Positions 25,872-51,852 are shown, counted from the stretch's first letter. The stretch is DNA of 64,000 bases from Macrostomum lignano (GCA_002269645.1 NIVC01000655.1:186001-250000); one strand, 5' to 3'. The notes: generated from the letters alone by a model not told the origin. Numbers and translations: made by a program.

Positions 25872-30664
<4,793 letters not shown>

Positions 30665-31935
30665 TTAAATGCCACTATTCTTTTCAAATAGAAGCAGCTA
30701 TGTGCTTACTGTGATAGTCAATTTCAAGTATTTTTCGATGCCTATAGCTCACCCTGTTCAGTTTGTACAATGGTATTGAGTCATCGATAAAGCTGTATTA
30801 GGCTATATTTGGCACAAGTTTCTACAGGTGCATGTTATGGGATTGCAACATTCATTGGACACAAGCTACTCGTATATAGCGCAGAATTTTATCTACTAAC
30901 ATTTAACTGTTGTACAAGTAAGCTAAGGACACATTGTGCTTTATCTAAAAATTGATATCCTTGCTATATTTGCTACCACAACTGATTGAATAGGAAAGCT
31001 AGATGATGAGAGCTAGCCTTTTATTTGCTTGTTAAATTGCTTTTATATAAAAAAGCATCTTTTGTGACACTTAGGCTTGGCTTTTGTCCCATGGAACTTT
31101 GCATTGTGCAATATGAGCAATGCCAGGCATATTGTAGTGTACAGAGCCAGGCTTTTAATGTTAGGCAGTAGCACAATAATAGTAATCAGTTGGCAGTGCA
31201 TCTACTAAATGTTTGTTCTACCTTTTTAATCCAGTGATTTTTCAGCTTAGTCAATTTAGATAATGATAGTTATTTTATTACAAATTTTGTTTCAAAAAGT
31301 TATAGCTAGTTGCTTTAGATATTATATATAGGCTTGCAAGACTGCTATAGCCTACTACTATATGTATAAAATAATTTTTGCTGTAAAACTTCCATTATAT
31401 GACAATGACAAATATATTGACATTCATTATTTTTTAGTGATATTAAATATATAAATATCTACTATTATTGTTTTTTCCTATATGTTAAAGGATTTTCTCC
31501 AAATATTATGATGGCAATAGCAATAACAATCCTAAAATTGTCAAGATTGTCATTTTGCTACCTAAACTTGTAAACAATTAACAAGCCTTTAAATTATGCT
31601 AAATTCTCTATATTGGCTATTATATATCTTGTCAGCCTAGAATTTTTTATGGTATCAACTTTGAACACTTGGCCATAACCACAGCCACCCTTTCTCTTAA
31701 GCTTGAGAAAAATTAAGACCTAAGAAAAAAAACTAAGACCTTTCTTAAATATAACTCAATTCTTAGTTGTATAAGTATAATTTACAATTATAAAAAAATT
31801 AACTTGCCTGGCATGCTATGCAATTGGTTAAGGCTTTTGTTTTCTATTCTAGTATAGGCTTATAAACAGCATGATTTATGATTTGCAATGAGATATCATT
31901 GATTCATTCAACTAAGGCTATCTTTTTTATTAGAG

Positions 31936-32388
31936 GCAGGGGGTCGTGTGCAACCTGGCGCACTTTAAGCGACATAGGCACACAACCAGCAAGAGGCATT
32001 ACTGCCTATTCCGCCAACTCCCTTGAGCAGGCATACAAGTATGCGGATATGTATGCAGGCACATACTTATATCGGAGTATATAGTGGCCCTAACTTTATA
32101 TTATTGTTAGGCATGTACACTTCAATGTGCCTTGGGGGGTTAGCCCTAACCCCCCAATGTGCCTTGGGGGGTTAGCAGGGGGTCGTGTGCAACCTGGCAC
32201 ACTTTAAGCGACATAGGCACACAACCAGCAAGAGGCATTACTGCCTATTCCGCCAACTCCCTTGAGCAGGCATACAAGTACGCGGATATGTATGCAGGCA
32301 CATACTTATATCGGAGTATATAGTGGCCCTAACTTTATATTATTGTTAGGCATGTACACTTCAATGTGCCTTGGGGGGTTAGCCCTAA
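31936..32388. repeat. Direct tandem duplication (period 239 bp) of a CpG-containing insert, with a perfect hairpin GGGGGGTTAG-CC-CTAACCCCCC
   Basis: Copies 31936-32149 and 32175-32388 differ at two positions. Confidence 0.92.
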
Positions 32389-32629
32389 AGGCCGTTAAAC
32401 ATGCTTTATATGTATATTCTAACCTTGGCTAACTGGTGGATTGCATAGACAATTGCTATATTCATAGATTTTACTTAACTGTGCATTGGCTTTGCCCATA
32501 TACTAAGCAGCCTATCACTGCTATGTTTTTGACTATAGTGCCAAAGCATATATGGCTGATACTAAAAAATGGTCTGCCTGTGTGTGTCCTAAGTCTTTGG
32601 TGCTTGCTAAGTATCTATTGGATACTTGC

Positions 32630-32935
32630 TTTTGGGGGATTGCTTGCTTTCTGGGGGATTGCTTGCTGTCTGAGGGGTTGCTTGCAATCTAGGGGATGCT
32701 TGTTGTCTAGGAGATTGCTTACTATTTGAGAGATGCTTGCTGTCTAAGGGAATGTTTACTATCTAAGGAATGCTTGCTGTCTGGGGGATTGTTTGCTATC
32801 TGAAGGATGCTTGCTGTCTAAGGGAATCATTGATTGCTATCTAAAGAATACTTGCTATCTGAGGAATGCTTGCTGTATAGGTGGAGGATTGCTTGCTGTC
32901 TAGGGGATGCTTGCTGTCTGGGGGATTGCTTGCTA
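32630..32935. repeat. Degenerate ~20-bp tandem repeat (GGGGATTGCTTGCTGTCT)
   Basis: Recurring TGCTTGCT(G/A)TCT motif; similar material at 38930-39230. Confidence 0.75.
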
Positions 32936-33019
32936 CATTATATTTTTATTAAAATTATTAAATTCTTTCTTTGCTCCCTAACAGGGGGCTTAAATTGCTA
33001 GTCATCAGATATCAGATAT

Positions 33020-33560
33020 AGGCCTACTAAAAATAAAAATCTTGCTTGCTTATGCGTAGTCAATTATTTTCTGAATGGCTCAACCAATTTTCTCTATTTT
33101 TTTCACCAAAAGATATTAAATGTGTCTAGGACAGTAGGCCTATATGTAATTTTTTAAGCTCTAGCTTATTGCTAAAGCAAAAGGAAAGGATTAAATAGTC
33201 AAAAAACTGATTTAAATGGGCTTTTTCAATGCAAATTTTATTAGGCCCTAGCTTGCACACAGTGAAAGACTTCATAGCCAATTTTAATGATTGCATCAAC
33301 AGATTCAATATCAAATGATAACAAAACTCACTCTGCCCCATTGCCTGCCAAGATAATTACTCTATTTAACTTGTGTAACCAATAAAGAGGGGATATAGGC
33401 CTAATAAAAATTTTTGATGCTAGTAGATAGCCTACCCCAGCTAGTAGGCCTACTAAAAGTAAAGATAATGAAATCATTTCTAAAAAGGAAAAAGTATATC
33501 TAAAAGATATTATTACCTAAAAGACCCAACCAAATGTTGACTTGACCTAGGCTATACTAT
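33020..33560 (-). mobile_element. Old, CpG-decayed copy of the dispersed element at 45358-46290
   Basis: Reverse complement of about 33077-33415 aligns colinearly with about 45915-46214. Confidence 0.8.
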
Positions 33561-33718
33561 ATACTAATTTGCTTACCCAATATTATCCTAGGCCTATACC
33601 TATAGCCTATGTAGGCCTATACAGAACAGATGTCGATGACAAAAAACATGATATTGCAAACAAACTGATCACATGAATTTTGATGAACAGAACAAAATGA
33701 AATGCACATGCAAAAAAA

Positions 33719-34240
33719 TTGGCTATCCTGCAGAATTGTTTGTTAAACTCACTGTTACGCACATTTTTTTAGCTATTGACATGAAACTTTCTAAAAATGA
33801 ATATTTGGCAATGTTGCAATTTGTTTTGCATAATTATTTTTACTTTTGAATATGCACCAACGTGTCACGGAAGCCGGATTTCTGCCAAGGTTGTACCTGT
33901 TGCCGAGCTGCTGAATCTGATGGATGGCATATTCCCTTTGCACTACATATATGATGGTACATGCATGTACCCTACCAATGTCTTTGGTGCAGTGTATTGG
34001 ATTGCCCATTACTAATATCCCCTGTGAGGATTTGAGTTCTGAGACTTGTTTTGAGCGACTTTTGAGGATTCAGTGACTAAGGAGCGATGTTGGCGCGTAT
34101 TCAAAAGTAAAAATAATTACGAGAAACAAACTGCAACATTGCCGAATATTTCATGTCAATTCTTTCATGTCAATAATACTACAATAGCTACAAACAAAAA
34201 TGTGCATACAGTGCAGCCAAAAATTCTGCAGGATAGCCAA
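33719..34240. mobile_element. Foldback/MITE-like element with ~140-bp imperfect inverted arms
   Basis: Arms 33719-33861 and 34089-34240 (e.g. TTGGCTATCCTGCAGAATT / AATTCTGCAGGATAGCCAA). No TSD identified. Confidence 0.7.
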
Positions 34241-34279
34241 AAATCAACAATGACAAATATTAGTTGTGACTTGTGTTGA

Positions 34280-34530
34280 CGCTGCCGCCGTCATCTTGTC
34301 TTGAGTAGGCCCTAGTCAGGCTTAGGCCACTTTAAGTCGTAAAATTTGAATTTATAAATTCTACGAAATTCTCATGCTTTAAGTGTTTAAGGCTCCAAAG
34401 TCAGGCATAGACTCCAAATTTGCCAGTACGTGTCAACACGCAGCTTAGTTGAAACTAAAAACAATGAATTATAAACGGACCAATAAATCAATAAACGCGC
34501 GCGCCGGCGGGATCCATCTATGCTAGCAAG
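34280..34530. promoter_or_regulatory. Candidate CpG-retaining bidirectional promoter region between U2AF65 (-) and HRD1 (+)
   Basis: CpG-rich patch (AAACGCGCGCGCCGGCGGG) at the point where gene orientation switches, flanked by CpG-free DNA. The function is inferred. Confidence 0.45.
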
Positions 34531-34888
34531 GCTAGTGCTGGAGTCCAGAAGTTAAAATAAAAATTTAAACACGGTTCGCCTTTCTATAAACAATTAAACA
34601 AACACTGTACACATATTTTTACTTTGATAATCTCGTGAACCTACCGGCTAATGTTTTAGATACAAAAATACTTTTAATTTCTATTAGCGGAATATGTTAT
34701 TATTTCATGTTTTTTTAATACAGGTTTGGCACAGGGTGATTTTTGTCGAAATTTAAACTGCAACGTAGAAATTTTTTTTTGAATCCACGTCATTTATTTA
34801 CAATTTGCTATTAGTCAAATTTTAGTGTTTGACCAACAAGTTTTTCCTGTGACTTAGCAAAGTCTTTAAGAAACCAATAAATGCAATT

Positions 34889-37800
34889 ATGCGCACCTTT
34901 GCGCTGTCATCCTTAAGCTTTGCTTTGACAATTCTTGTCTTTGGAAATGCTTTCTTTCAGAAAAAGCAGTTTTATCCATCCATTGTCTACTTAACAAAGT
35001 CAAACTCAAGTACAGCCGTAAGTGATCGCATATGATATATTGTATATTGAAAATATAAATTATTTTATAAGGAGCAAATATTACCATTCCTATAGACTAT
35101 ATGCTATGTTGATGAAAATGTTTGCAAAAATATCTTCTAGTTATTAATTTTTTTTCTTTCTTTTGGAATAAAATTAGGCCTATATTCATTATTTAAATAG
35201 GTTTTAGAGTATGCTGTAATTTATCATTTTTTTAGATAGGCCTGAATACCATGGTCAGGAAGGTGCAGCATGTGCGCCAGAATAACATCCATCAAAATTT
35301 TTGTTGTGCGCCACGTGCGCCGAGAAAAAAAAATTACTTGTGCGCCATGCGCAAAGAAAAATATACTTGAAAAAGCACCATCAAGTATTAAGTATCTAAA
35401 TTGAATCAATACCAATGGAAGTTCAAGCAGTTCAATCATGGCTTCTATTTGCAAAATATAAGCAAAAAGGTGCAACAAAAGCTGCAAAAGGCACAAATTT
35501 GTTAAAATTTGCAATCATTAAAAGCTACGATTAATGAAATTTTAAATAGAAACAACATTGGAAAAAATGACTATCGTATCGACTATCGCTTATTTTATTG
35601 ATTGATTGACATTTAATATACATTTTTTTTATTATTCATTATTATATTGTCACATACACTGATGTATAGTGTTCCGCCGCCGCGAGTTTTGACCTCCGTA
35701 ACCGTAACCGTAGCCGTAAGAAAGAAGCAACTTCCGTAGCCGAATTTTGCCGTCATTACGGGCTAAAAAAGTCCGTAACCGTAATTTGCCATAACCGTAG
35801 CCATAATGTATAACAAAAATTGATATTTTTGCATGAAAAGTAGGGCAGACAGAAAAGGACAGATAAAAAGGATAAAAGGATAGCAATAAAACCTACTTGT
35901 TGTTCGTTCATGCATTAATATTCATTTATTTTTTCGTAAATATAATATCTTTATCGAAGTATTCTATAGCATTGTTGTATGCAATTGTGTGCTTGGTGCC
36001 TTTTTCAGTTTTCTGTGTCGTGATTCTGTTTTGTTTCGCTACAATATGAATATATGACTGACGTGCCAAGGTCAATGTGTATGTTTAATATCATTAAATA
36101 AATATATGAATTTGTTCAAATAAAACTGCTTCAAAATTTCCGATGACTAAGAAATTGCATGTTACATTTTTTCATTTTCATTTTATTGTATTGTCTATTG
36201 TATTGTCTTTTTTGGTTTCAATCAATTTTCAATCATAATTCATATTCTTATCCTATTAGTATTTATTTAGTATTTCCTTATTAATATTCTTTCATCCTTA
36301 TCCTCATAATCTAAATCTAATATCCTATTTTTATGCTAAGGAGCTAAATGCTACATATGGCTAAGAAATAAGAATGCCAGATTCTTAGTCTCTTGTAGGC
36401 TTTGACTGGCTCTCTCTGTCTCGCTGCTATCATGCTATCGCTATGCTATGCTATGTCGTATGCCTAATGAGAAAATTTGTGAAAAAATTCGTTTTTCATT
36501 TTCAAGAAGTTTCGTAGATATTTAGAAACTTAACAAATGTAAAAAATAATAATAACTAGTAAAACAAAATGAAAACTGGTTGAAGTTGATATAAAAAAAT
36601 TCTTTTATAACACTAAACAGTTAAAAATAAATAATTTTTGTTACGGCTACCAATTACGGCAAGTCTAGAAAAATCTCCGTAATCTGTAACCGTAACCGTA
36701 AGCTCAAAATATGTCCGTAACCGTAATCCGTAATGAAAATACGGCTTCAAAAGTGTCGTAGCCGTAATTTGCTGTAGCCGTGGCTGTAATTACGGCGGAA
36801 CACTACTGATGTACCTTGTGTGCTATGCGCCGAGCCATGCACCAATGCACCAAGCCATGCGCACGCGGCGCAGTGAAGTGTGCGCCGTGCACCAGCAAAT
36901 TGCTGATTTGTGCCGGAAAATTCTGAGGATTCTACTGTCTTCCTGGCTTTGGCCTGAATAAAGCCTATGCAATACTTCCTAGGCCCCAGCATAGGGCCTA
37001 TACATATTTGATGATTGTGACCCTTTGATAATTGATGTGGTTAATAATGGTCCAATTTGGTGATAGCCATTTTGGTAACAACCAATTTGCCAACAAGTGA
37101 TTATAAACAATATTTATTGATTAATATGCTCTAATTTAGAGTCTAAAATACTTTAAAGACTAAAGACTCTAAAGTCTAAAAGACTCTAAAAGAGTCTAGA
37201 ATAATGTGCAAATGAACTTGAAGGAAAGAAAAATAAAAAATAATTGTTCTTGCACACTTTGAAAGATTTGAATTAATGCATAAAACTATTTGTTTAAAAG
37301 TATTTAAGCCAATCTTTCCCTCTTTTTAGGGCACTAAATGCATGCACCAAAAATATTGTATAATTGACCAAATATTGTATATATTAGAATCTCTAAGTTA
37401 GTGAATTTAAATTACAAAATTTACTTTCTTTTTTGTTAATTATACTTACAAAATTTTAATGTTTAAAATACATTTTGTTTAATTTTCTTTGCCTTCAATC
37501 TTATTTAGAAAGTTAATACACAAGTATTAACAAATTATAATATAGTTCAACTAGAAATTAAACTATATATGACAAAATATTTAAGATGGTAAATAGTAGA
37601 TTAATTATCGATAAAGTTAACTACCATAAAGATATCACACTTGATCATGTAGAATATGCCTAAAAATTCAAGTGTGCAATAACCTTGCATACCTAAATTT
37701 AAGTATATACAGTTGGCATGCACAACTGTTAAGTAATAGTATATGCGCATACCTGGTATACACTTTATAGAATCATATAGAATATTTAGTGTTAAGTAAA

Positions 37801-40800
37801 AAAAAGATTCCTGAAAAAAAATAATTTTAAAGAAAAAAAAAGAAAAAAAATTGAGGAAAAAATTTCAATTTTTCTAGCTGTTAAGCTAGTTATTAATGCA
37901 TTAAAATAGAAGTTTGTGTGTACTGATTTTATATTGCAAATAGTATAAAAAAGTAAGAAAAATAATTGACTAATTATTAGCAAAAAAGGTCTTTTACACA
38001 ATGTCAAAAAAGTCATTTACTGTTGCAATGCAAACAATGTTATTTATTGTTGCAATATTAGCCTAGATTTGAGAAAATGGGTGCATACTAAATTTTTTTG
38101 GTGTGCATTTGTAATTCTTCCATTTTTGTTCAGGTATGCACCTAGCACAATCTGGACCTAGCATGAGATATTGTGTTGGCAGTTATGAATTTGCTTTGTT
38201 ACCCTAGTGGCAATTATCAAAGTGGTTATTTTTTGTTACCAAAGTGGCTATTACAGAAATGGGTTATATTCATATGGCCCATGTATCTTGGTCTTAGAGA
38301 ATGACCCCTTAGCACATTTTTGCTAGACCCTTAATGCATGTCTACAAATTTTTAAATCATCCCAACAGGGCATCATATTAGGCTTTTTATTTATCACATA
38401 TATATTGGCTTTATTTTGACTTTGACTTTATATATTTGTATTATAATATTAAAACCATTAAAAGTACTATAATTCATTTTTAATTTGACAAAAGCTAGCC
38501 TGAATATAAGCATACTAGGTTTGAATTGTAATATTTTAATTTTGTAATTTAAAGTAAAAAAAATAATTGCATTAGCTTAAAAATGATTATTTCATTGGCT
38601 AAGACAAGTATTATTGTACTTATTAAAAAGATATGATTGTACACTAGCTAAAAAAGACTTTTGCACTATGTCAGAAAAGAATTTGTGAAAGATAAGAAAA
38701 AGGTTATTGCACTATATAAGATAATGACTTTATTGTATTAGATAAGAAATATTGCAGTACATAGAGAAAGGACTTTTGCTCTAGATGAAAATGAATATTT
38801 CATTATCTAAGATATAGATTATTGCATTGGCTAAAGAAAGGATTATTGCACTACATAAGAAAAATATTACTGCACTTAATAAGTAAAAGATTATTGTACT
38901 AGCTAAGGAAAGTGTTACACTAACTTGTTATTTAGGAGGGGTCATTTACTATTTGGGAGAGAGGAGATTCTTTTTATCTAGGGATGTTTACTATATCTTG
39001 GGAGTGCTTGCTATTAGGAGGGGGATACTTGTTATCTGGCAAGTGCTTGCTGATATTTGAAAGATACTTATTATCTAGGGAAGGCAGTTCCTATCTGGAG
39101 GTATTGCAAGCTATCTAGGGTTGCTTACTTTTAGGGGATATTTGCTCAGGAGAATTGCTGAGATTTCAAGGCTTGCTAGGGGGATTGTTTTGGGGAACAA
39201 TCAAGGATTGGGGGGAAGTGTCAAGGCAAATAGAATTCATATAAATAATTTTTGTCCCTTATTGAGTGCCTGAAAGAGGGCACTATAGATTGCTAGTCTA
39301 TCTATTATTTTTATTCCTATTTTTGTTTAGATAAATGTGTATGGTTAGCACTTAAAAGTTTTGAATATATATAATACACTAGATCATATTGAGTGCACAT
39401 TAGAATATACGATAGGTATATTATATTGGTCAACACACTATAATCTATTTTTTCTTAAAATTGATAACATATTGACAGACAGACATATCAACAAACCATT
39501 TTAGTATATGGATAGATATGGCCTTTAGGCTAGAAATTTATATGGATATATATTTGCCTCTCATTGAAAATTTTGTTATACAAAAATGGTTTGGGTTTGA
39601 TATATAAGTATTTAGTGTAGAACTTGTAAATTTTCATCAAATAAAACTCTAGTAATTTATTTCTAATATGCAGGCATTGGCATCTTGTATGATGATATTT
39701 GAGCCTATTTTGAAGATTTGTCTAGTTAAAGTTTTATTTGTCTACTTGTTGTCTTAGTAGTCTAAACTGAATTTCTTACTTTTGCATTATTTAATAATTT
39801 CAAGGTTTTAGACCCCATCCTAAATTTTTGGCCATGCCATTGCCACTGCTAATAGAGTAAGTCCAACTATCAAAATGAAAAATGCCTAAAAATACTTTGA
39901 TCTATCAATACTTCCTAAATATCTTACTGCAGTTAAAGATGATAGAATTGCAATAGAAATCTAAGAAAGCTAATAAGATTTAGAAATACAGTTCTAAGGA
40001 ATCTTATTATTTTCTGATAAGATGTTGTATAGTACACAAAAATATTGACTGCTCTCATAGGAAAATAATAAGTGCATAAATTTAATTCACTAAATATTGT
40101 AGGTTCTCTATCTGCAAGGCATCGTACTAATTTACCTATTGGGCAAAGCCATAGCTCGCATATTCTTTGGCCAGCTTCGTCCAACCGAAGTTGAGCACCT
40201 AATCGAGCGGGGCTGGTACGCTATCACTGAGACCTGCTTAGCTTTCGCAGCATTTCGCGACGACTTGTCATTCCGTTTCTTCACCATGTTCACTTTGCTG
40301 CTATTCATTAAATGCTTTCACTGGCTAGCAGAGGATCGAGTCGATTTTATGGAGCGCAGTCCGGTTATTACTCGAGTGTTTCACCTGCGAGCTATGGGTG
40401 TACTCACCTGCCTGTGCCTGCTCGATGCCGCTTTTATTCGATACGCCTATCGAACCACATTGGCTAGAGGAGCCAGCGTACAATTAGTATTCGGTTTTGA
40501 ATACGCCATATTGTTTGTGTTCGCTTTGGGCGTCTGGCAAAAGTACATATTGCACGCGATAGATTCGCGCTCCGACGAACCATGGGATCGTAAAGCTATT
40601 CTAATGCTTTGGGGCGAGCTGGTCTTGTCTGCCGCAAGCCTGCTATTGTACGCCATGTTCATCTTCATCATGCTACGAGTGCACGCTTTTCCATTGTTCG
40701 CTATTCGACCAGCTTATACGGCATTTAGAAGCTTCAAGCTGGCACTAAGCGACATGGTGCTGTCGCGCCGGGCCATCCGAATCATGCAGCAACGCTATCC

Positions 40801-40987
40801 AGACGCTACAGCCGAGGATTTATCTAGCTCCGATAATGTCTGCATCATCTGTCGCGAAGAGATGCTGCCTGATACTGGCTGTAAAAAATTGCCATGCGGC
40901 CATATTTTCCATTCTAATTGCTTGCGATCTTGGTTCCAGCGCCAGCAGACTTGTCCAACTTGTCGGATGGATGTACTTAGAGACAAT

Positions 40988-41019
<32 letters not shown>

Positions 41020-44000
41020 ACAGCCACCTGCAGCGGCTGCTGCTGCTGCTGCTGCTCCTTCGGCTCCATCGTCAGCTTCGGCTGATTCCCAAGCCGCTGC
41101 CGCCGCTGCATCCGGTAGCGCCGCAGCTTCCTCGTCGCCTCCAGCCGCATTTTTCCTACCTTCCGCCGATTTCTCGGCATCGATTCCTGCTGCCCCGGCT
41201 CCGCTGCTGACGGACGATTTGAAGCAACTCAGCGAGGCTGAACTTCGCCGAATGGAGGCTTGGAATCGCGAAGCTCTCGAGCGTCGAGTTGAGCACCTGC
41301 AGAGAATCTCGGCTCTGCTAGACGCCGCCGTACTGCAGATGGGCCAGTACACCCAGCTAATGGCGCGGATTGGGCCGCCTCCACCGCTTGCTGAGGACAG
41401 TCAAGCAGGCGCATCTGCAGCCGCCGCTTCTGCTCCTGCTGCTGGATCAGCTGCTGAGGCCACCGCTAATAGTACTAGCAGTAAGTAGTATAGTGCATGT
41501 ATCGTAATTTTTACACAACTGTTTCTTATGCGCGTGTAAATCATTTTTCAGTCTGTCGTTCTAAAAATCTGATCTTTTTAATCGTTCTTAAGCGTCAAGC
41601 AATGTTAGATTAGGGATAGAACTAGCCAATTCCAACCCCCGTTGGGGCTTTCCGTCAGAACTCCTACCAAAGTTTTCCCACGCAAAAGAAATTCACCCAA
41701 CTGAACCCCCATCCAAAGAATCCCTCATCCATAAAATCCTTGATGCAAATAATCTCACATGCAAAAAATCCCTCATCCAAAGAATCCCCATACAAAGAAC
41801 CCCCCATTGACAGAATCCCCGATCCAAAGAATTCTCCATTCAAGGAATCCTCTATCTGTAGAATTCCCTATTTAATGAATCGCCCATCCGTAGAATCTCA
41901 CATGCAAAGAATACCCATCCTTCCCGTCCCATCCCCATCCCATCCCATCGATAGAATCCCCGATCCGAAGAATTCCCCATTTAAGGAATCCTCCTATCTG
42001 AAGAATACCCCGTCCAATGAATCCTTTATTCAAGAAATCCCCATCCACAGAAACCCTCTATCCAAAGAATCGCCCATCCATCCCTATCTAAAGAACCCCC
42101 CATCCATCCCTATCCCAAGAATCCTCCTATTCATCCCTATCCAAGGAATTTCCCTATCCATTCCTATTTAAATAATCCCCTTAACCATCCATATAAAAAA
42201 AATCCTCCTCTAAAAAGTCCCCCTTCGAAGAATACACATCAGAATAATTCACATCCTTAAATAATCCCCCATCAAAAAAATAATTGGCCAATGAATCCCA
42301 GAATCCCTTCATCTAAAGAACCCCCGTTCAAATAACCCCCATCTAAAGAATCTTTCATCTAAAGAATCCCCCATTCAAAAAACCCTCCATCGAAACAATG
42401 CCCCACCGAAGAAATTCCCCAATGAATCAATGAATCCAAAGATATCCATTAGAAACATCCCTCATCCAAAGAATCATCAATCCATAGAATTCCCCCAAGA
42501 CTTAAACATCTCAGCAATTCCCCAAAGCCTCGACACCTCAGAAATTTTCCCCAAGCATTGACATCTAAGCAATTCCGGCGCAAGCCTTGACATGTTACCA
42601 ATTTCTCCTCGTCCAAAGCCTTGAAATCTCAGAAATTCCCCCAAGTCTTGACATCTCAGAAATTCCCCCAAGCCTTGACATCTCAGAAATTCACCTAAGC
42701 CTTGACATCTGAATAATTCTCCTTCCCAAGTCTTGAAATCTCAGGAACTCCCTCTTAAGCCTTGGTATCTCAGCAATTCCCCAATAAGATTTGACATCTC
42801 AGCAATTTATCCCTAAGCCTTGACATCTCAGCAAGTCCCTCTTAAGCCTTCATTAATTCCCCAAGGTAGGATTTTATACATGTATCTCAATAATTCCCCC
42901 CCTGTAAATCTTAACATCTTAGAATTCTCTTCCGAGCAAGCATCCCCTGATAGAAAGTACCCCCAGCAAGATTAGTGAAGCAGTTTCCTCAGCTAGCCAA
43001 TTCCAACCCTCGTTGGGGCTTTCCGTCAAAACTCTAACCACAGTTTTCCCACGCAATAAAATTTCACCCAACTGAATCTCCCATACAAAGAACCCCCCCC
43101 CCCCATCCAAAGAATACACCACCCATAGAATCCACGATACAAAGAATCCCCCATCCAAAAAACCTCCCATCGATAGAATCACCGATCCGAAGAATTCCCC
43201 ATTCAAGGAATTCTCCTATCTGAAGAATTTCCCATCCAATGCATTGCCCATCCATAAAATCTCACATGCAAAGAATACCCTTCCAAAGAATCCCTATTTA
43301 AAAAATCCCTCATTCACAGAATCCCCATCGAAAGAATCCCCCACCCATCCATATCCAAAGAAACCCCCATCCATTCATATCCAAGGAATCCCCCATCCAT
43401 CCATATCCAAAGAATCCCCCATCCATCCATATCCAAAGAATCCCCCATCCATCCATATCCAAAGAATCCCCCATCCATTCATATCCAAAGAATCCCCCAT
43501 CCATCCATATCCAAAGAATCCCCCATCCATTCATATCCAAGGAATCCCCCATCCATCCATATCCAAAGAATCCCCCATCCATTCATATCCAAGGAATCCC
43601 CCATCCATCCATATCCAAAGAATCCCCCATCCATTCATATCCAAGGAATCCCCCATCCATCCATATCCAAAGAATCCCCCATCCATTCATATCCAAGGAA
43701 TCCCCCATCCATCCATATCCAAAGAATCCCCCATCCATTCATATCCAAGGAATCCCCCATCCATTCATATCCAAGGAATCCCCCATCCATTCATATCCAA
43801 GGAACCCCCCATCCATTCATATCCAAGGAACCCCCCATCCATTCATATCCAAAGAAACTCCCCATCCATTCATATCCAAAGAAACTCCCCATCCATTCAC
43901 ATCCAAAGAATCCCCAATCCATGCATATCCAAAGAAATCCCTATCCATCCATATCCAAAGAAACCCCCATTTATCCCTATCCAAAGAATCCTCCTATCCA

Positions 44001-47000
44001 TCCCTATCCATTCCTATCTAAAAAATCCCCCTCCAAAGAATCTCCATGAAAATAATCTACGTCCAAATAATCCCCATCCACAGAATCTCCATCCACATTG
44101 TCCATTGATTCTCCCATCAAAAGAATAATTGGCCAAAGAATACCCTTATCTAAAAAACTCCGTTCAAAAAATCCACGTCTAAATAATCCCCATCAACAGA
44201 ATCCCCCATTCAAAGAATCCAAAGAATCTCCCATCCAAATAATCCGCCCATGAATCCCCTCATCTCCTCAAGATATCCATTAGAAGCATCTCTCGTTCAA
44301 AGATTCCCCAATCCATAGAATTCCCCCCCCAAGACTTAACATCTCAGCAATTCCCATCAAGCCTTGACACCTCAGAACTTCCCTCCAAGCCTTGACATCT
44401 CAGAAATTCCCTCTTAAGCCTTGGCATCTCAGTAATTCCCCCAGTAAGCCTTTATATCTCAGTAATTCCCCCAGTAAGTCTTGACATGTAAGCAATTTCT
44501 CCTCGTGCAAAGCCTTGACATCTCAGCAATTCCCTTCACGCCTTGATATCTCAGGAATTCCCTCTTAGCCTTGGCATCTCAGTTTAATAAAAAATTTTGA
44601 ATACACTACATGAATACTCGTAGCTTCTCTTCTACTGATTTACCTGACGTTTTTTTTAGTTTTCTTTTGCTTAAAAGTAAAAATTAAATTGCTAAAAAGT
44701 TGAAAATTAAATTCTTTTAATAAAAAACTTCTACAATCTAAAAATTCGAACCCACGTCGCTGCATTAGCAGGTCAGTCTGTTTACCTCTAGGCTATCTCT
44801 CATCGTTTTGAAAACATAAATTGATAACATAAATCGTCGCACTTATAAAATTCAACACTTTCAAAACTCCACGCACAGAGTAAATCACGTGAAGCAGTTA
44901 TGACAATTTCTCAGGCAGTCTGTATCAGTTTCAATTAAAGTCACCAATATAGTTACACAATCTAAATCTAAATTCAATGGGGCTGGCTGGAATTGTGGAG
45001 TTTGCGATATTGGAGAGCGTACAATCAGTAAATAAAGTAAAGTTCATTGGAATCTTCTTTTTAATGATGTGCTTTTAATTTTTCGAATCTAAGCAAAAAA
45101 TTATATTCCCGAACTCAGCGTTTCAAGTTCTTTCTTGCAATACAAGGCTCTCTTCTGAAAGTGAAAAACTCGAAGCACAAACAACGATTGAACATTCCTG
45201 CTATAAAGCATTCAAATTCATAAGGTGTACATTCAGCGCCAGCTACAGTGAGAGGCCTGCAAGTTGATGCATTGAAATTAACAACCAAGCCAGCCCATGA
45301 ATAATTGAATAGCGACACCCGCCCCTCAATTAAAATGTGTTGCGCAACCTTTCAACGCTTGTAGCTCTCCACGCGAGTGTGGAGAACCAATGCTATAGTT
45401 GGCACTGAGTTATGATGCAATACAATTCCATCGGCAGTCAGACTGCTTCTCAATCGGAAAGAACTGTTTGAACTTTAAAAAACAGGGAGAAAATCGAGTT
45501 TTTCGAATATTTAAGCCCGAAAAAATGAAGCAATTTCTTAGCAAAATTTTGTGTACCAGCGCACCATCAATACGCATCGAATGCAGAAAACCCCACGATA
45601 TTCCGACTATGTAGAGTCAAGTTAAGCAAAGGTTCCTATAGGTACATAGTTTTGATTTTTAGTATATTGGAAGCATCCAGAATTTTTATTATACCCCCCC
45701 CCCCTTAATTGGTTACGCAAGTTAAATAAATCGAGTTTTTCGAATATTTAAGCCCGAAAAAATGAAGCAATTTCTTAGCAAAATTTTGTGTACCAGCGCA
45801 CCATCAATACGCATCGAATGCAGAAAACCCCACGATATTCCGACTATGTAGAGTCAAGTTAAGCAAAGGTTCCTATAGGTACATAGTTTTGATTTTTAGT
45901 ATATTGGAAGCATCCAGAATTTTTATTATACCCCCCCCCCTTAATTGGTTACGCAAGTTAAATAGAGTAATTATCTGGGCAGTGGGGCAAAGTGAATTTT
46001 CTTATCAGTTGGCTCTGGCGCAATCATTAAAATTGGCTGTGAAGTTTCTCGCTGCGCGCAGGCTGATAAAAAAATACACTAAAAAGGCCATTTAAAACAG
46101 TTTTTCGAATATTTAATCCCCTTAGCATTGAGCTAGAGCTTAATAAAATTACATGTACCGTCCCGGGCACATTTGACATCTTTTGGCGAAGAAACGGAGA
46201 AAATCGGTTGAGCCTTTTGGGAGATAACCTGTTACATACCCACAGACAGACAGGGCCGGTGGAGGGGGGGTTGCTACTTTAGATATATTATTAGATTAGA
46301 TTAGAAGATTAGAAGATTAGAAGATTAGAAGATTAGAAGATTAGAAGATAGAAGATTAGAAGATTAGAAGATTAGAAGATTAGATTAGATTAGATTAGAT
46401 TAGATTAGATTGCTGGGATGCCAATGCTCAAGGGGAGTTGCTGGGATCCCCAGGCCAATGTGGAGTTTTTAATGCCAAGGCTCAAAGGCCGTGCTGATAT
46501 CTTAGGCTAGAATAGCTGGGTTTCAGGGCTGATGCTTAAGTTTTTTTCTTAGGGAAACTGATATAAGTGACGGTAAAATGCTATGTACATTATGCATAGG
46601 GCAAATAATGCTAGTCCTTCTTTTAAATTAAGTTGACTTTGAGTTCTTAGACTCTGGGGGGTTCACAAGCTCAAAATTTCACGTCGAAAGCACCTTCCTT
46701 CGCAAACTCGAAACTTCACAAGGTCGAAAGTTCACGTCAACAACTCCTTAGTCCATCGCAAGGGATGTCATATTACATATGGCAAACATGGGGGGGGGGC
46801 TTCATTAGACCAAAATTTCACAACGCCGAAGACTACTGCATAATCCTTGTTATATTAAGTTTTCTACGATGTGAAATTTCGTTCTTATAAAGTTTTGAGC
46901 TTGTGAAAGCGCCCCGGTCACTTGCCATTGATCTATCCATAATCCTCATTTAAGTTCAAACTGACACGATTCTCAAACCGACAACTTATCCAATTTACTA

Positions 47001-47246
47001 ACAACAGGCTCCACGAAACCGGCTGTAAAGTCTGAGAATTGGTCACCCGAGCCAGCCGCTAGCCAGCCAGCGTCAACCGCGAAGCCGGAGTCGCCGTCAG
47101 TTGTCGACGACAAGCCAGACCTAACTGGCTCAGGGTCGGCTTCCTCCGCCACCGCGCCCGACCAGTCGGAGATTAGGCGGCGTCGGCTGCTTCATTTGTC
47201 GTCTCGCGACGGATTGAAAGCTGAGGATGAGGATTCGCTTGATTGA
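34889..47246 (+). CDS. SYVN1: E3 ubiquitin ligase HRD1/synoviolin, 3 exons, about 581 aa
   Basis: Exons 34889-35017 (MRTF...KQFYPSIVYLTKSNSSTA, GTAAGT donor), 40103-41480 (VLYLQG..FFGQLR..TETCLAF..KCFHWLAEDRVDFMERSP; RING-H2 CIICREEM..LPCGHIFH..CLRSWF..CPTCR; GTAAGT donor), 47008-47246 (EIRRRRL). 1746 nt, in frame. Confidence 0.95.
35249..36952. mobile_element. Older non-autonomous DNA transposon with 8-bp TSD (host of a nested insertion)
   Basis: CCTGAATA at 35241-35248 and 36953-36960; imperfect 14-bp TIR CCATGGTCAGGAAG vs CCAAAGCCAGGAAG; repeated GTGCGCC subterminal motifs. Confidence 0.65.
35667..36805. mobile_element. Young non-autonomous hAT-like element, 1139 bp
   Basis: Perfect 13-bp TIR TAGTGTTCCGCCG/CGGCGGAACACTA; 8-bp TSD CTGATGTA (35659-35666, 36806-36813); dense CCGTAA/TTACGG subterminal repeats; no transposase ORF. 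Confidence 0.9.
38560..39230. repeat. Highly degenerate tandem repeats (TTATTGCACTA-type, then GGGGAT(A/G)CTTGCT-type) in HRD1 intron 1
   Basis: Recurring motifs visible; the 39140-39175 part matches the reverse complement of the CCTTGACATCTCAGCAATTCCC array. Confidence 0.6.
40988..41060 (+). repeat. Coding CAG/CAA (Q12) and GCT (poly-Ala) triplet repeats in HRD1 after the RING domain
   Basis: QQQQQQQQQQQQPPAAAAAAAAA in the ORF. Confidence 0.9.
41622..44585. repeat. Tandem duplication of a ~1.37-kb composite unit in HRD1 intron 2, with internal 26-bp (CCAAAGAATCCCCCATCCATCCATAT) and ~27-bp (AAGCCTTGACATCTCAGCAATTCCCC) arrays
   Basis: CTAGCCAATTCCAACC at 41622 and 42993 followed by colinear sequence; the 26-bp array is expanded in copy 2 (43330-43960). 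Confidence 0.88.
44735..44800 (-). other. Degenerate tRNA-like head (tRNA pseudogene or SINE 5' fragment)
   Basis: Minus strand GATAGCCTAGAGGTAAACAGACTGACCTGCTAATGCAGCGACGTGGGTTCGAAT: A-box-like TAGCCTAGAGG, B-box-like GGTTCGAAT, possible GCT anticodon loop; no acceptor stem. Confidence 0.5.
45358..46290 (+). mobile_element. Non-autonomous dispersed element, possibly rolling-circle (Helentron/DINE-1-like), with an internal 237-bp tandem duplication
   Basis: 5' hairpin TCTCCAC-GCGAGT-GTGGAGA (45366-45385); 3' AAAATCGGTTGAGCC...ACAGACAGACAG...TTTTAGATATATTA end typical of such elements; duplication 45491-45964; second copy at 33020-33560. The family assignment is by resemblance only. Confidence 0.6.
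46290..46390. repeat. (TTAGAAGA)n/(TTAGA)n microsatellite
   Basis: Directly visible. Confidence 0.95.
46656..46915. mobile_element. Small MITE-like remnant
   Basis: Inverted TTCACAAGCTCAAAA / TTTTGAGCTTGTGAA near GGGG/CCCC ends; no clear TSD. Confidence 0.5.
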
Positions 47247-49029: not shown

Positions 49030-49977
49030 ATGTCTCTATCTGGAAAGGTCTGTCTAGTCACAGGCGCCACTCGCGGTATCGGCAAAGGCATCGCCCTGCA
49101 GCTGGGCGAGGCCGGTGCCACGGTGTACATCACTGGCCGAACGATGGACCCGAAGCCAGGTGCTGCAGTTGGCGGTAGCATCAAAGAAACCATTGCAGAG
49201 ATCGAAGCCAGAGGCGGTCGAGCTATTGGTGTTCAATGCGATCACAAGAAGGACGAGGATGTTAAGCGGTTGTTTGAGCAGATTCAGCAAGAGCAAAATG
49301 GTCGTCTGGACTTGCTGGTTAACAATGCTTATTCGGCTGTGTCTTACATTTTTGAATCGATAGGCAAGAAGTTCTGGGAGCTGGACGTGTCAGCTTGGGA
49401 CGAGGTGAACAATGTAGGCTTGCGCAATCACTACATCTGCTCTGTGTACGCCTCTCGCATGATGGTAGAGCGGGGCACGGGTCTTATTGTTAACATCTCC
49501 TCAGCTGGCGGATTGCGCTACCTGTTCAACGTCCCCTACGGTGTAGGAAAGGCGGCTGTAGATCGTCTGGCAGGCGACATGGCCGTTGAGTTGAAGTCCC
49601 GAGGCGTGGCCGCCGTCAGTCTGTGGCCCGGCGCCGTTCAAACCGAAGAGATCATGTCTAATCTGTCAAATATGCCGCCGCAGCAGCGTCGAGTGTTTGA
49701 GCAAGGCGAGACTGTTGAGTTTGCTGGAAAAGCCATTGTTGCATTGGCTTCTACACCTGTGAGCAGCTTGTTAAAGGACAAGACTGGCCGAGTGCTGCTG
49801 ACTGGCGACCTTGCCGACGAGTACTGCCTGCGCGACGCTGGCAATCGTCAGGTGCTCAGCATGCGCTCGCTAAAATTCATGCTATCCCACGCGGGCTATT
49901 CGTGGCTGGCCGGTTTTGTACCAACCTTTGTGAAAGTGCCGCGGTTCTGTCTGGCTCTGTTTGGAAGCCGGTTCTAG
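49030..49977 (+). CDS. DHRS1: DHRS1-like short-chain dehydrogenase/reductase, copy 1 (intronless, 315 aa)
   Basis: TGATRGIGKG, GRLDLLVNNAY, WDEVNNVGLRNHY, YGVGK (YxxxK), SLWPGAVQTE. Confidence 0.92.
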   Translation: MSLSGKVCLVTGATRGIGKGIALQLGEAGATVYITGRTMDPKPGAAVGGSIKETIAEIEARGGRAIGVQCDHKKDEDVKRLFEQIQQEQNGRLDLLVNNAYSAVSYIFESIGKKFWELDVSAWDEVNNVGLRNHYICSVYASRMMVERGTGLIVNISSAGGLRYLFNVPYGVGKAAVDRLAGDMAVELKSRGVAAVSLWPGAVQTEEIMSNLSNMPPQQRRVFEQGETVEFAGKAIVALASTPVSSLLKDKTGRVLLTGDLADEYCLRDAGNRQVLSMRSLKFMLSHAGYSWLAGFVPTFVKVPRFCLALFGSRF

Positions 49978-50650
49978 TTACTAATCTCTAAGCCGACTCC
50001 ATTTACTTACTTGTCTGTCTGATTCAACTAGTTGAAATTGATTAAACTCTGATTTAAATTTATTTTTAAAGGTAAAAGTTGGTTTCGCAAATGCGCCTCG
50101 TATAGGTATTCTTATTTTACACTGATTGTATCTGTTGATACGAAGTAAATTTATCTAACGCACTTCATCCCCTCTCAAGATTTAGCCATCTCAAGTTATT
50201 ATTCAAAACGTAACTAGTTTGTACGCTCGATAACAGAAGTGCAAGAGTAACAATCAGTTACTTTAATAAAAATTATAATTACTCCGCTGATATATGCATA
50301 GTTGCGTCTCTTAGATAAATGCTTATTTGCTGTTTTAAAATTCGACTCTACGAGTACAACTAAAGCGTTCGCTTGATTGATGTATTTTCCGCTCATTTTT
50401 GAGGCACTTGCGTGTGAAGTTTTATTAAATTTATCGTAAATAAATTATGTAACAATATACTTGTACCGGTGCGGTCTAGATTCATCCCTACTTTGGTAGC
50501 GTTATTGTATTCTTTAGCTTGTTGGTTAATTTCTGTTATATAAATAGGCTGCATCTACCAAATTATTTTTACGTTTGATTACATTTATCACTAATTTGAA
50601 AGAATCACTTTTCTTCTTGCATGCCAAAGGCAAACCAAACAGGTTTCATC

Positions 50651-51852
50651 ATGTCACTCTCTGGCAAGGTTTGTCTAGTCACGGGCGCCACTCGCGGCAT
50701 TGGCAAAGGCATCGCTATCCAATTGGGTCAAGCCGGAGCTATTGTCTACGTCACTGGCAGGACGCTTGAGCCAGTGAACTCTGTCAAAGCTGATGGCGAT
50801 GTCGCCGCAATTGGCGGCAGCATTAAAGAAACAGTGGCAGAGATCAAAGCCAGAGGCGGCCAAGCTATTGGCGTTCAATGCGATCACAGAAATGACGAGG
50901 ATGTGAAGCAACTATTTGAGCAGATTGAACGAGAACAGAATGGTCGTCTTGACTTGCTGGTTAACAATGCATTTTCAGCGGCGCGTGCAATTGCTGAAAA
51001 CAGGGGCAAAATGTTCTGGGAAATGTCGCCGGATATGTGGGACGAAGTGAACAATGTAGGCTTGCGCAATCACTACATCTGCTCTGTGTACGCTTCTCGC
51101 ATGATGGTCGAGCGAGGCACTGGACTGATCATTAACGTGTCTTCCGGCGGCGGATTGAGCTACCTGTTTAACGTGCCATACGGTGTGGGCAAGGCCGCTT
51201 TTGATCGCATGGCTGCGGACATGTCTGTGAGTACTTGAGTAGCTAAAACTGCATTATAGATTACTGCTGGACTAGCAGAAAGCGACTTGAGGAGTAGATT
51301 GAGACATTACCTTAGTAGTAGATTGGGGCTAAAGGAGTAAGTGGGCCTGGAGGAAACTTACAAGAATCTGGCGGTCAGGATAAATTCAGTCATATTCCGT
51401 AACGGCTCCCTTGAAATACCCAACAGATTGAGCTGAAGTCTCGCGGCGTAGCCGTCATCAGCCTATGGCCAGGCGCAGTCCAAACCGAGGAGGCCCTAGC
51501 CGTAGTGGCGGCAGCCGACGCCGATCCAAGCCGAGTGACTCGACCTATTGATCGACGCATGCTAGAACTATTCCGTAGAGGGGAAACAACAGATTTTGTT
51601 GGAAAAGCCGTGACAGCATTGGCTGCCCAGCCTGTGTCCAGTTTGTTAGCTAGCAAGACAGGCAGAGTACTGCTCACTGCCGAGCTAGCCAGCGAATACG
51701 GCTTCTCAGATGTTGACGGTCGGACTATTGTCAGCATGAGATCGGCAGCTTTCCTGTTGGAATTTTATGGATTTAGTCGACTGTCCGGTCTGATTCCTGC
51801 GTGCATCAAAGTGCCATTTTGGTTGGTGTCTGCCGCAACTAGCAAGTTTTAA
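50651..51852 (+). CDS. DHRS1: DHRS1-like SDR, copy 2 (2 exons, about 333 aa)
   Basis: Exons 50651-51226 and 51427-51852; 200-bp phase-0 intron GTGAGT...CAACAG joining ADMS|IELKSRG; same SDR motifs. Confidence 0.9.

What the first reader, a model, noticed from the sequence alone, without database searches (positions are those of the whole stretch)
30880..40100. Sharply bounded CpG-erased domain on both sides of the U2AF65/HRD1 divergence point
By manual count: 0 CG in 30882-31944, 3 CG in about 32400-33850, and 3 CG in about 36960-40100. Composition predicts tens per block. Equally AT-rich DNA elsewhere (13.7-14.5 kb, 57.7-58.6 kb, 61-63 kb) keeps CG. CpG survives only in the central island (about 33.85-35.0 kb) and in inserted elements. 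HRD1 exon 2, directly adjacent, is CpG-rich even at synonymous sites, which does not fit simple uniform gene-body methylation. Established: 5mC deamination gives CG>TG/CA. Inference: a germline methylation or deamination system targets these 5' introns/outrons specifically.
Basis: partly seen in the sequence, partly recalled or inferred. Interest (0 to 1): 0.85.

Follow-up and report, generated by a model that had tools for sequence, protein, structure and literature searches.

The report
CpG-erased flanks of a flatworm promoter
In a Macrostomum lignano-type flatworm, the old non-coding DNA on both sides of the promoter shared by U2AF65 and HRD1 has lost almost every CpG while adjacent exons, later introns and neighbouring genes keep theirs, which is most likely the mutational footprint of locally targeted germline DNA methylation in an animal whose methylation pattern has not been described.

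Summary
GpC is enriched and nearby AT-rich DNA has CpG o/e of about 1. The organism is Macrostomum lignano or a close relative. An independently assembled homeolog, 7% diverged, has the same CpG-free domain.

Three internal comparisons of paralogous repeats show directional loss of CG to TG, CA or TA inside the domain. Copies of the same families outside it keep their CpGs. The process therefore depends on position, not on repeat family or age. It seems recent: the only two differences between 99%-identical tandem copies inside the domain are CpG transitions.

The domain is bounded by the U2AF65 leader (30880), a 1.2-kb promoter island (33861-35027) and the HRD1 exon 2 acceptor (40104). Synonymous sites of HRD1 exon 2, HRD1 intron 2, U2AF65 intron 2 and a Vps55 intron are not depleted, so this is not canonical gene-body methylation.

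The best explanation is position-specific germline 5mC followed by deamination. The species is reported to keep DNMT1 and DNMT3. Methylation itself, the "outron" status and genome-wide generality were not tested.

The parts
29981..30628 (-). U2AF65 exon 1 (start codon at 30628). It is CpG-rich and lies outside the erased domain.
   Evidence: Four-exon model with canonical GT/AG sites and a 510-aa product; RRM hit in exon 2; CpG o/e 0.95-1.40 by codon position.
30629..30880 (-). U2AF65 leader or upstream conserved segment with 4 CpGs, all shared with the homeolog. Its end is the left boundary of the erased domain.
   Evidence: Shared CpGs at 30736, 30785, 30871 and 30880. Acceptor-like 'attcag' lies directly before the ATG and 'ttatttcag' at about 30650.
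30881..31935 (.). CpG-erased block A: 0 CG, 22.5 expected.
   Evidence: Aligns to L001 5188-6075 at 89-92% identity, where CpG is also absent.
31936..32398 (.). Insertion absent at this site in the homeolog: two tandem copies of a 239-bp element, 13 CpG, o/e 0.47. The copies differ only at 31960/32199 (CG versus CA) and 32042/32281 (TG versus CG).
32399..33860 (.). CpG-erased block B: 3 CG, 45 expected. It contains an 18/37-bp minisatellite (32612-32934), the decayed R1 repeat copy (33074-33421) and the decayed left arm of an inverted repeat (33719-33861).
33861..35027 (.). Non-depleted island (35 CpG, o/e 0.87, GC 37%). It contains the CpG-retaining right arm of the inverted repeat (34089-34240) and the presumed bidirectional promoter.
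   Evidence: In 34148-35027, 21 CpGs are shared with the homeolog.
34889..35017 (+). HRD1/synoviolin exon 1 (43 codons, MRTFALS...STA; donor GT at 35018).
   Evidence: Sequence read; matches the N-terminus of P0001 and P0002.
35028..35236 (+). Native start of HRD1 intron 1: 0 CG. It is too short to be significant on its own (expected 2.2).
   Evidence: aligned to L001 up to 10349.
35237..37016 (.). Inserted material absent from the homeolog. It is an outer element carrying a nested hAT-like non-autonomous element at 35672-36807, with a 13-bp terminal inverted repeat TAGTGTTCCGCCG, a perfect 8-bp target-site duplication CTGATGTA, 41 CpG and o/e 1.39.
37017..40103 (+). CpG-erased block C, the native part of HRD1 intron 1: 3 CG, 58.7 expected. 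It ends at the acceptor ttgtag.
   Evidence: Aligned to L001 13763-14598 and 16649-18337.
40104..41480 (+). HRD1 exon 2. The first CpG is at 40123, and there are 99 CpGs with no depletion at synonymous positions. This is the right boundary of the domain.

Best explanation
Two blocks of old non-coding DNA (30881-33860 and 35028-40103, minus later insertions) flank a 1.2-kb protected promoter island shared by the divergent housekeeping genes U2AF65 and HRD1. I propose that these blocks are, or very recently were, heavily CpG-methylated in the heritable cell lineage (neoblasts/germline) of a Macrostomum lignano-type flatworm. Spontaneous deamination of 5-methylcytosine then converted essentially every CpG to TpG or CpA, and later to TpA.

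The methylated state belongs to the position, not to the sequence family. Anything that lands in the domain starts to lose CpGs, while copies of the same repeats elsewhere keep them. The state stops at the U2AF65 leader, at the island and at the HRD1 exon 2 acceptor, so the exons and the rest of both gene bodies lie outside it.

Shown here: the depletion, its boundaries, its presence in a homeolog, the direction and context of the substitutions, and the sparing of exons and other introns. Inferred: that 5mC is the cause, that DNMT1/DNMT3 (taken from the literature) write it, and that it is still active. Unknown: what defines the domain.
For: 1. Depletion is specific to CpG. CpG o/e is 0.05 against GpC 1.86, and P is 1e-10 to 1e-21.
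2. The same domain is present in an independently assembled homeolog that differs at 6.9% of sites across the domain. The non-coding blocks evolve at about 4-11% divergence, so they are not conserved elements.
3. R1 repeat: all 11 CpGs of the copy at 45.9-46.2 kb are TG, CA or TA in the domain copies of both homeologs. Shared C/G>T/A changes number 32 against 6 in the reverse direction. One CpG decayed independently in the two homeologs, to CA in the window and TG in L001.
4. Inverted repeat at the island edge: the arm inside the island keeps 4 CpGs, and the arm inside the domain has TG or CA at all four.
5. 239-bp element: the copy in U2AF65 intron 2, shared by both homeologs and therefore old, keeps 15-16 CpGs (o/e 0.85-1.0). 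The pair inside the domain has 6-7 (o/e 0.45-0.5). The only two substitutions between its 99%-identical copies are CpG transitions, one in each copy.
6. Pooled over these three comparisons, C>T occurs at 20 of 46 CpG cytosines, 28 of 194 non-CpG cytosines, and T>C at 12 of 323.
7. CpGs outside the domain are conserved between homeologs and private CpGs are balanced. Inside the domain the window has 1 private CpG against 14 in L001 (p=0.001).
8. Equally old AT-rich DNA nearby is not depleted: intergenic 57659-58590 o/e 1.16, Vps55 intron 0.83, native parts of HRD1 intron 2 0.80-1.11.
9. Papers state that M. lignano retains DNMT1 and DNMT3 and has low overall 5mC (PMC11292947, PMC9246332, PMC10658182). 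Low overall 5mC is what one would expect if the methylated compartments have already lost their CpGs (inference).
Against: No methylation data were available.

TpG and CpA are not more enriched in the domain (o/e 1.24 and 1.06) than in control DNA (1.22 and 1.12).

A test for ongoing purging of new CpGs between homeologs was inconclusive. TG/CG differences are under-represented about threefold in the domain but also about twofold in controls.

The evidence for recent activity rests on small numbers: 2 substitutions, 1 independent decay, and the 14:1 asymmetry. Some of it could be technical if methylated CpGs were miscalled in a long-read assembly.

Exon sparing and restriction to the 5' flanks are the opposite of what known animal gene-body methylation does, so the targeting mechanism is unexplained.

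Only one locus and its homeolog could be examined.
Confidence: 0.62

Rival explanations
1. Fossil footprint. The blocks were methylated in an ancestor and lost their CpGs then. Methylation at this locus has since stopped, and the CpG-free state persists because too little time has passed for CpGs to re-accumulate.
For: The depletion predates the homeolog split, since it is shared. L001 carries 14 private CpGs in the aligned domain, and the four that could be polarised with paralogous copies are gains. This is about what neutral re-accumulation would give. The test for ongoing purging was inconclusive.
Against: The window copy has only 1 private CpG against 14 in L001 (p=0.001). Sequence present in the domain of the window but not in that of the homeolog is already half depleted, and its two 99%-identical copies differ only by CpG transitions. 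One CpG was lost independently in each homeolog.
Confidence: 0.15
2. Repeat-directed methylation. Methylation is guided, for example by small RNAs, to particular transposon or repeat families and spreads locally. The domain would then be an old transposon graveyard rather than a position-defined compartment.
For: The blocks contain repeat-derived DNA: the R1 family, a minisatellite, a palindromic element, the 239-bp element and a hAT-like element.
Against: Copies of the same families outside the domain keep their CpGs. This includes an equally old copy in U2AF65 intron 2 (o/e 0.85-1.0) and R1 in HRD1 intron 2 (11 CpGs). The two arms of one inverted repeat differ according to which side of the boundary they lie on. 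Depletion runs uninterrupted up to the exon 2 acceptor.
Confidence: 0.1
3. Canonical invertebrate gene-body methylation of two housekeeping genes, with an unmethylated promoter.
For: Both genes are housekeeping genes. The promoter island is spared. The species is reported to have DNMT1 and DNMT3 (PMC11292947).
Against: HRD1 exon 2 has CpG o/e of 1.2-1.3 at synonymous positions, and U2AF65 exon 1 has about 1. Exon CpGs are conserved between homeologs: 93 shared, 10 private. HRD1 intron 2 and U2AF65 intron 2 are not depleted. The affected DNA is the 5' flank, not the 3'-weighted body.
Confidence: 0.04
4. A cause unrelated to 5mC: selection against CpG in the discarded intron or outron RNA, or deaminase-type or RIP-like hypermutation of repeated DNA.
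For: C>T is also elevated at non-CpG cytosines (14% against 3.7% for T>C), and the blocks are more AT-rich than related copies elsewhere.
Against: The CpG context is hit about three times more than other contexts, and depletion is near total for CpG only, with GpC enriched. The non-CpG bias is within the range of ordinary AT-biased mutation (own knowledge). Duplicated DNA outside the domain, such as the 237-bp tandem pair at 45491-45964 with 9 CpGs per copy, is untouched. Elements inserted into the same intron carry many CpGs, which argues against strong selection at the RNA level.
Confidence: 0.05
5. Chance, low complexity or an assembly artefact.
For: Other CG-free stretches in the window are tandem arrays.
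Against: The blocks are mostly not tandem arrays. P is 1e-10 to 1e-21. The same state is seen in a different public assembly.
Confidence: 0.01

Closest known systems
Mosaic CpG methylation of invertebrate genomes, with CpG-depleted methylated domains next to non-depleted unmethylated ones (for example Ciona, oyster, annelids). From own knowledge and the background sections of PMC11292947 and PMC9246332.
   Same: Sharply bounded domains of CpG depletion lie beside DNA with CpG o/e near 1. The substitution signature is of the deamination type. DNMT1 and DNMT3 are reported for the species. The promoter is spared.
   Different: In those systems the methylated unit is the transcribed gene body, exons included, and coding CpG o/e is the standard proxy. 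Here exons, later introns and the rest of both genes are spared, and only the promoter-proximal non-coding flanks are erased. The depletion (o/e 0.05) is, by my recollection, far stronger than the roughly 0.3-0.6 typical of methylated invertebrate genes.
Vertebrate CpG islands in a globally methylated, CpG-depleted genome (own knowledge).
   Same: An approximately 1.2-kb non-depleted island at a bidirectional housekeeping promoter is flanked on both sides by CpG-depleted DNA.
   Different: The depletion is local, about 3 kb and 5 kb, not genome-wide. The rest of the 64-kb window has o/e of about 0.7-1.1. The island is not GC-rich (37%). Exons a few kb downstream are fully CpG-rich.
Transposon-directed methylation and RIP-like repeat mutation in fungi, plants and some animals (own knowledge).
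   Same: Repeat-derived DNA inside the domain is C>T mutated and AT-enriched relative to sister copies.
   Different: Sister copies of the same families outside the domain are unaffected, so targeting follows location and not repeat identity. CpG is the dominant context.

Membership tests
5mC-deamination footprint (methylated-domain CpG depletion) | CpG strongly under-represented relative to base composition while GpC is not | tested here: met
   CpG o/e 0.05 and GpC o/e 1.86 in 5.6 kb; P 1e-10 to 1e-21.
5mC-deamination footprint (methylated-domain CpG depletion) | Directional CG>TG/CA substitutions relative to related sequences | tested here: met
   All 11 CpGs of R1, all 4 of the inverted-repeat arm, and both differences between the tandem copies. 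C>T at 43% of CpG cytosines against 14% of non-CpG cytosines.
5mC-deamination footprint (methylated-domain CpG depletion) | Excess of TpG and CpA over composition-matched unmethylated DNA | tested here: not met
   TG 1.24 and CA 1.06 in the domain against 1.22 and 1.12 in controls. Many former CpGs are now TpA, so this feature may have been erased by age.
5mC-deamination footprint (methylated-domain CpG depletion) | The species encodes maintenance and de novo CpG methyltransferases | not testable with these tools
PMC11292947 and PMC9246332 state that M. lignano retains DNMT1 and DNMT3.
5mC-deamination footprint (methylated-domain CpG depletion) | 5mC actually present on the domain in the heritable lineage | not testable with these tools
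   No methylome data were accessible. [quoted passage not shown]
Canonical animal gene-body methylation | Coding exons of the methylated gene are CpG-depleted, including synonymous sites | tested here: not met
   HRD1 exon 2 has o/e 1.20 at codon positions 2-3 and 1.34 at 3-1. U2AF65 exon 1 has 0.95-1.40.
Canonical animal gene-body methylation | Depletion extends through the transcription unit, including internal introns | tested here: not met
   Native parts of HRD1 intron 2 have o/e 0.80-1.11. The old repeat in U2AF65 intron 2 has o/e 0.85-1.0.
Canonical animal gene-body methylation | Promoter/TSS region spared | tested here: met
   Island 33861-35027 has o/e 0.87.
Vertebrate-type global methylation with CpG islands | Genome-wide CpG depletion outside islands | tested here: not met
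   Non-tandem DNA elsewhere in the window and in L001 has o/e of about 0.7-1.3.
Repeat-family-directed methylation / RIP-like mutation | All copies of a targeted family are affected wherever they lie | tested here: not met
   R1 and 239-bp copies outside the domain keep their CpGs. The 237-bp tandem pair at 45.5-46.0 kb is intact.
   No RNA data. Acceptor-like sites lie just upstream of the ATG, but no conserved upstream exon was found.
   The long intron of the Vps55/LEPROT-like gene (about 58810-59826, 1017 bp, shared with the homeolog) has 31 CpGs and o/e 0.83. This is a single case.

The most novel reading that the evidence does not exclude
Macrostomum has a mode of CpG-methylation targeting that has not been described in animals. 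Methylation would be confined to position-defined non-coding compartments flanking certain promoters. It would exclude exons and the downstream gene body, would be efficient enough to drive CpG o/e to about 0.05, and could differ between the homeologs of this recently duplicated genome (active on the window copy, relaxed on the L001 copy).
Probability: 0.22. Interest if true: 0.8.

Novelty: new variant of a known kind. Interest (0 to 1): 0.55.

Why it matters
Flatworms are usually treated as animals that have lost DNA methylation. M. lignano is the exception that keeps DNMT1 and DNMT3, and a 2022 review states that no free-living flatworm has a described methylation pattern (PMC9246332).

This locus gives a sequence-only prediction of where that methylation sits: promoter-flanking non-coding DNA, not exons or gene bodies. 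It also explains how overall 5mC can be low despite an intact enzyme toolkit, because the targets have already lost their CpGs. If the pattern holds genome-wide, it would be a targeting logic different from both invertebrate gene-body methylation and vertebrate global methylation.

The prediction can be tested directly in a tractable regeneration model with existing bisulfite or long-read data and by DNMT knock-down. If it does not generalise, the locus is simply one strongly methylated domain and is ordinary.

Tried and rejected
1. Sampling more of the genome failed. A search with a window GPCR ORF found no homologs. A concatenated multi-protein query returned only long unrelated U2AF-like proteins and used the last protein search. 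Two window SDR ORFs are not on record. Generality therefore rests on the window and one homeolog.
2. A test for ongoing purging of new CpGs, based on context-specific transition differences between homeologs, was inconclusive because controls show a similar deficit.
3. Per-position variability in the CpG-bearing intronic satellite 29193-29954: the CpG cytosine is the most variable position (9 T, 7 C). The array has a 191-bp higher-order structure, so events cannot be counted. Rejected as evidence. The 34-bp array analysis fell out of register.
4. Strand asymmetry (AT and GC skew, GT versus AC, cryptic donor motifs), used to infer the direction of transcription through the left block, gave no clear signal.
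5. k-mer enrichment showed only local motifs: a TAGGCCTA cluster near 33 kb and GCAAGC from the minisatellite. There is no domain-wide motif.
6. A permissive Rfam scan of 30-41 kb found no RNA family.
7. CpG-free satellites: 13 of 18 families lack CpG against 7.6 expected (P=0.005). They are equally poor in GpC because of strand-skewed composition, so this says nothing about methylation.
8. The primary paper on M. lignano methylation (Wasik et al. 2015) is not held. Five literature searches found no description of the genomic pattern.
Full report
OBSERVATION. There are 0 CpGs in 30882-31944 (expected 23), 3 in 32400-33850 (expected 45) and 3 in 36960-40100 (expected 61). After later insertions are removed, the native blocks are:
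- 30881-31935: 0 against 22.5, P=1.7e-10.
- 32399-33860: 3 against 45.2, P=3.9e-16.
- 35028-35236: 0 against 2.2, not significant alone.
- 37017-40103: 3 against 58.7, P=1.2e-21.
No mononucleotide shuffle came close. Pooled CpG o/e is 0.05 and GpC o/e is 1.86. The other long CG-free gaps in the window are tandem arrays whose unit lacks CG, so they are trivial.

ORGANISM AND GENES. The exon 2 ORF of HRD1 is 98% identical to a Macrostomum lignano protein (BOX15_Mlig032555g1), and the next hits are about 50-67% identical.
- U2AF65 lies on the minus strand with four canonical exons: 29981-30628, 28798-29103, 27696-27929 and 25872-26216.
- HRD1 lies on the plus strand. Exon 1 is 34889-35017, intron 1 is 35018-40103, exon 2 is 40104 to about 41480, and exon 3 is about 47001-47243.
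- The two start codons are 4.26 kb apart and point away from each other.

A SECOND COPY. The contig carrying that M. lignano protein (NIVC01000508.1, GCA_002269645.1; locus L001) is colinear with window positions of about 24.6 to 59.6 kb at roughly 82-96% identity. It is a homeolog or diverged paralogous region.
- It has the same CpG-free domain: 0 CpG in L001 5244-7045 (expected 45) and in 16602-17618 (expected 22).
- This excludes an artefact of a single assembly and shows that the state predates the split.
- The erased blocks differ by 4-11% between copies, so they are not conserved elements.
- The CpG-bearing pieces inside the domain are absent at the same place in the homeolog. They are 31936-32398 (a 239-bp element in two tandem copies), 33796-34148 (the centre of a palindromic element, which could instead be a deletion in L001) and 35237-37016 (an insertion carrying a nested hAT-like element with a perfect 8-bp target-site duplication).

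WHAT HAPPENED TO THE CpGs. Three natural experiments bear on this.
1. R1 repeat. The repeat at 33074-33421, and its homeologous copy at L001 7067-7385, has a relative at 46217-45909 in HRD1 intron 2.
   - All 11 CpGs of that relative are TG, CA or TA in both domain copies.
   - Shared changes are 32 C/G>T/A against 6 in the other direction.
   - One site became CA in the window and TG in L001, which means independent loss after the split.
2. Inverted repeat at the island edge. The arms are 33719-33861 and 34089-34240. The arm in the island keeps 4 CpGs, and the arm in the domain has TG or CA at each. This places the boundary at about 33861.
3. 239-bp element.
   - Its copy in U2AF65 intron 2 is present in both homeologs and is therefore at least as old as the split. 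It keeps 15-16 CpGs (o/e 0.85-1.0).
   - The pair inside the domain has 6-7 (o/e about 0.5).
   - The only two differences between its 99%-identical copies are CG/CA at 31960/32199 and TG/CG at 32042/32281. The ancestral state, judged from the relatives, is CG in both cases.
Pooled over the three, C>T affects 43% of CpG cytosines and 14% of other cytosines, while T>C affects 3.7% of sites. The loss is therefore directional, centred on CpG and dependent on position. Neither repeat family nor age alone explains it.

BOUNDARIES AND WHAT IS SPARED.
- Left edge: the last CpGs are at 30871 and 30880, in a 250-bp leader whose 4 CpGs are all shared with the homeolog.
- Centre: the 1.2-kb island 33861-35027 has o/e 0.87, and 21 of its CpGs are shared with the homeolog.
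- Right edge: the acceptor ttgtag is at 40098-40103, and the first CpG lies 20 bp into exon 2.
- HRD1 exon 2 has CpG o/e of 1.20 and 1.34 at synonymous-type positions and prefers CCG and ACG codons. Of its CpGs, 93 are shared with the homeolog and 10 are private.
- Native DNA of HRD1 intron 2 has o/e 0.80-1.11.
- The 1-kb intron of the Vps55/LEPROT-like gene has o/e 0.83, and the old intergenic stretch 57659-58590 has 1.16.
This is not canonical gene-body methylation, not a property of introns in general, and not a property of old AT-rich DNA in general.

IS IT STILL ACTIVE? Three results favour recent activity: the two CpG transitions in the young tandem pair, the independent loss in R1, and a strong asymmetry in private CpGs.
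- In 4452 aligned domain columns the window has 1 private CpG, L001 has 14, and 3 are shared (p=0.001). Controls are balanced.
- The four L001-private CpGs that could be polarised with paralogous copies are gains.
- This suggests that new CpGs persist in L001 but are removed in the window copy.
Caveats: the numbers are small, a context-based test was inconclusive, and miscalling of methylated CpGs in a long-read assembly could mimic part of the signal. Such miscalling would itself imply methylation.

MECHANISM. The best-supported reading is position-specific germline CpG methylation followed by 5mC deamination (confidence about 0.6). Papers state that M. lignano, unlike planarians and parasitic flatworms, retains DNMT1 and DNMT3 and has low overall 5mC. 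They also state that the genomic pattern is unknown in free-living flatworms (PMC11292947, PMC9246332, PMC10658182). I could not read the primary paper. If the blocks are near equilibrium, the ratio (TG+CA)/CG = 117 implies that CpG loss is many tens of times faster than CpG gain. That is more extreme than in mammals (inference). What defines the domain is unknown, and 'outron' status for the left block is unverified.

COMPARISON AND VERDICT. The locus behaves like the methylated compartments of mosaic invertebrate genomes, or like the shores of a vertebrate CpG island. It fails defining features of both: exons and the gene body are spared, and the depletion is local. I rate it a new variant of a known kind. 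It is of moderate interest now and of higher interest if a genome-wide scan and methylome data confirm an exon-excluding mode restricted to promoter flanks.

Noticed in passing
window 30881-40103 against L001 5188-18337: Private CpGs in the aligned erased domain are strongly asymmetric: 14 in L001, 1 in the window, 3 shared (p=0.001). Controls are balanced. This could mean homeolog-specific relaxation of the process, or a technical difference between the assemblies.
   Followed up: partly
window 30.9-40.1 kb against 46.4-59.6 kb: Divergence between the homeologs is uneven. It is 6.7-6.9% in the erased domain and the island, but only 1.5-2.8% in the downstream genes and intergenic DNA. This could reflect a higher mutation rate at this locus, constraint downstream, or gene conversion.
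   Followed up: no
window 38457-40103: The 3' 1.6 kb of HRD1 intron 1 is more similar between the homeologs (95.7%) than the other erased blocks (89-93%). No Rfam family was found there.
   Followed up: partly
window 26430-27629, 28403-28755, 29193-29954, 41706-44582: Each internal intron of U2AF65, and HRD1 intron 2, is largely filled by a different minisatellite (units of 34 bp, 4 bp, 22 bp and 16-28 bp). The window holds at least 18 satellite families. Thirteen lack CpG (7.6 expected, P=0.005), but they are equally poor in GpC.
   Followed up: partly
window 35672-36807: A non-autonomous hAT-like element with 13-bp terminal inverted repeats (TAGTGTTCCGCCG), subterminal CCGTAA repeats and a perfect 8-bp target-site duplication (CTGATGTA). 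It is nested in another insertion bounded by the direct repeat GGCCTGAATA and looks very recent.
   Followed up: partly
window 33719-34240; L001 about 9150-9330: A palindromic (foldback) element straddles the left edge of the promoter island. Its central 350 bp or so is missing in the homeolog, as expected for an unstable long palindrome.
   Followed up: partly
window 5147-6091 and 11550-12503 (minus strand): Two paralogous ORFs for rhodopsin-type 7TM receptors (Pfam 7tm_1, E 1e-14 to 1e-16). For the second one, no homolog was found in the 5.8-billion-protein search.
   Followed up: partly
window 49030-53325: Three tandem paralogs of a short-chain dehydrogenase (one shortened, 50621-51238). 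L001 shows fewer copies, so this is a recent local duplication.
   Followed up: no
window 55235-57658: A single 807-codon ORF of a WASP-like protein (WH1 plus a weak P21-Rho-binding domain). It has a 78-bp tandem repeat encoding polyproline-FGAKKSGGNIPPAPP units (56858-57175). L001 annotates the corresponding region as two genes (208 and 434 aa).
   Followed up: no
window 30629-31100 (minus strand): The 470 bp upstream of the U2AF65 start codon is about 95% identical between the homeologs and contains four conserved CpGs and two acceptor-like sites (attcag directly before the ATG, ttatttcag at about 30650). It may be a 5' UTR, a trans-splice acceptor region or the real U2AF65 promoter.
   Followed up: partly
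window 45491-45964: A 237-bp tandem duplication whose copies are identical except for one base in a poly-C run. Each copy has 9 CpGs and all are intact. It lies in HRD1 intron 2, next to the CpG-retaining R1 copy.
   Followed up: yes
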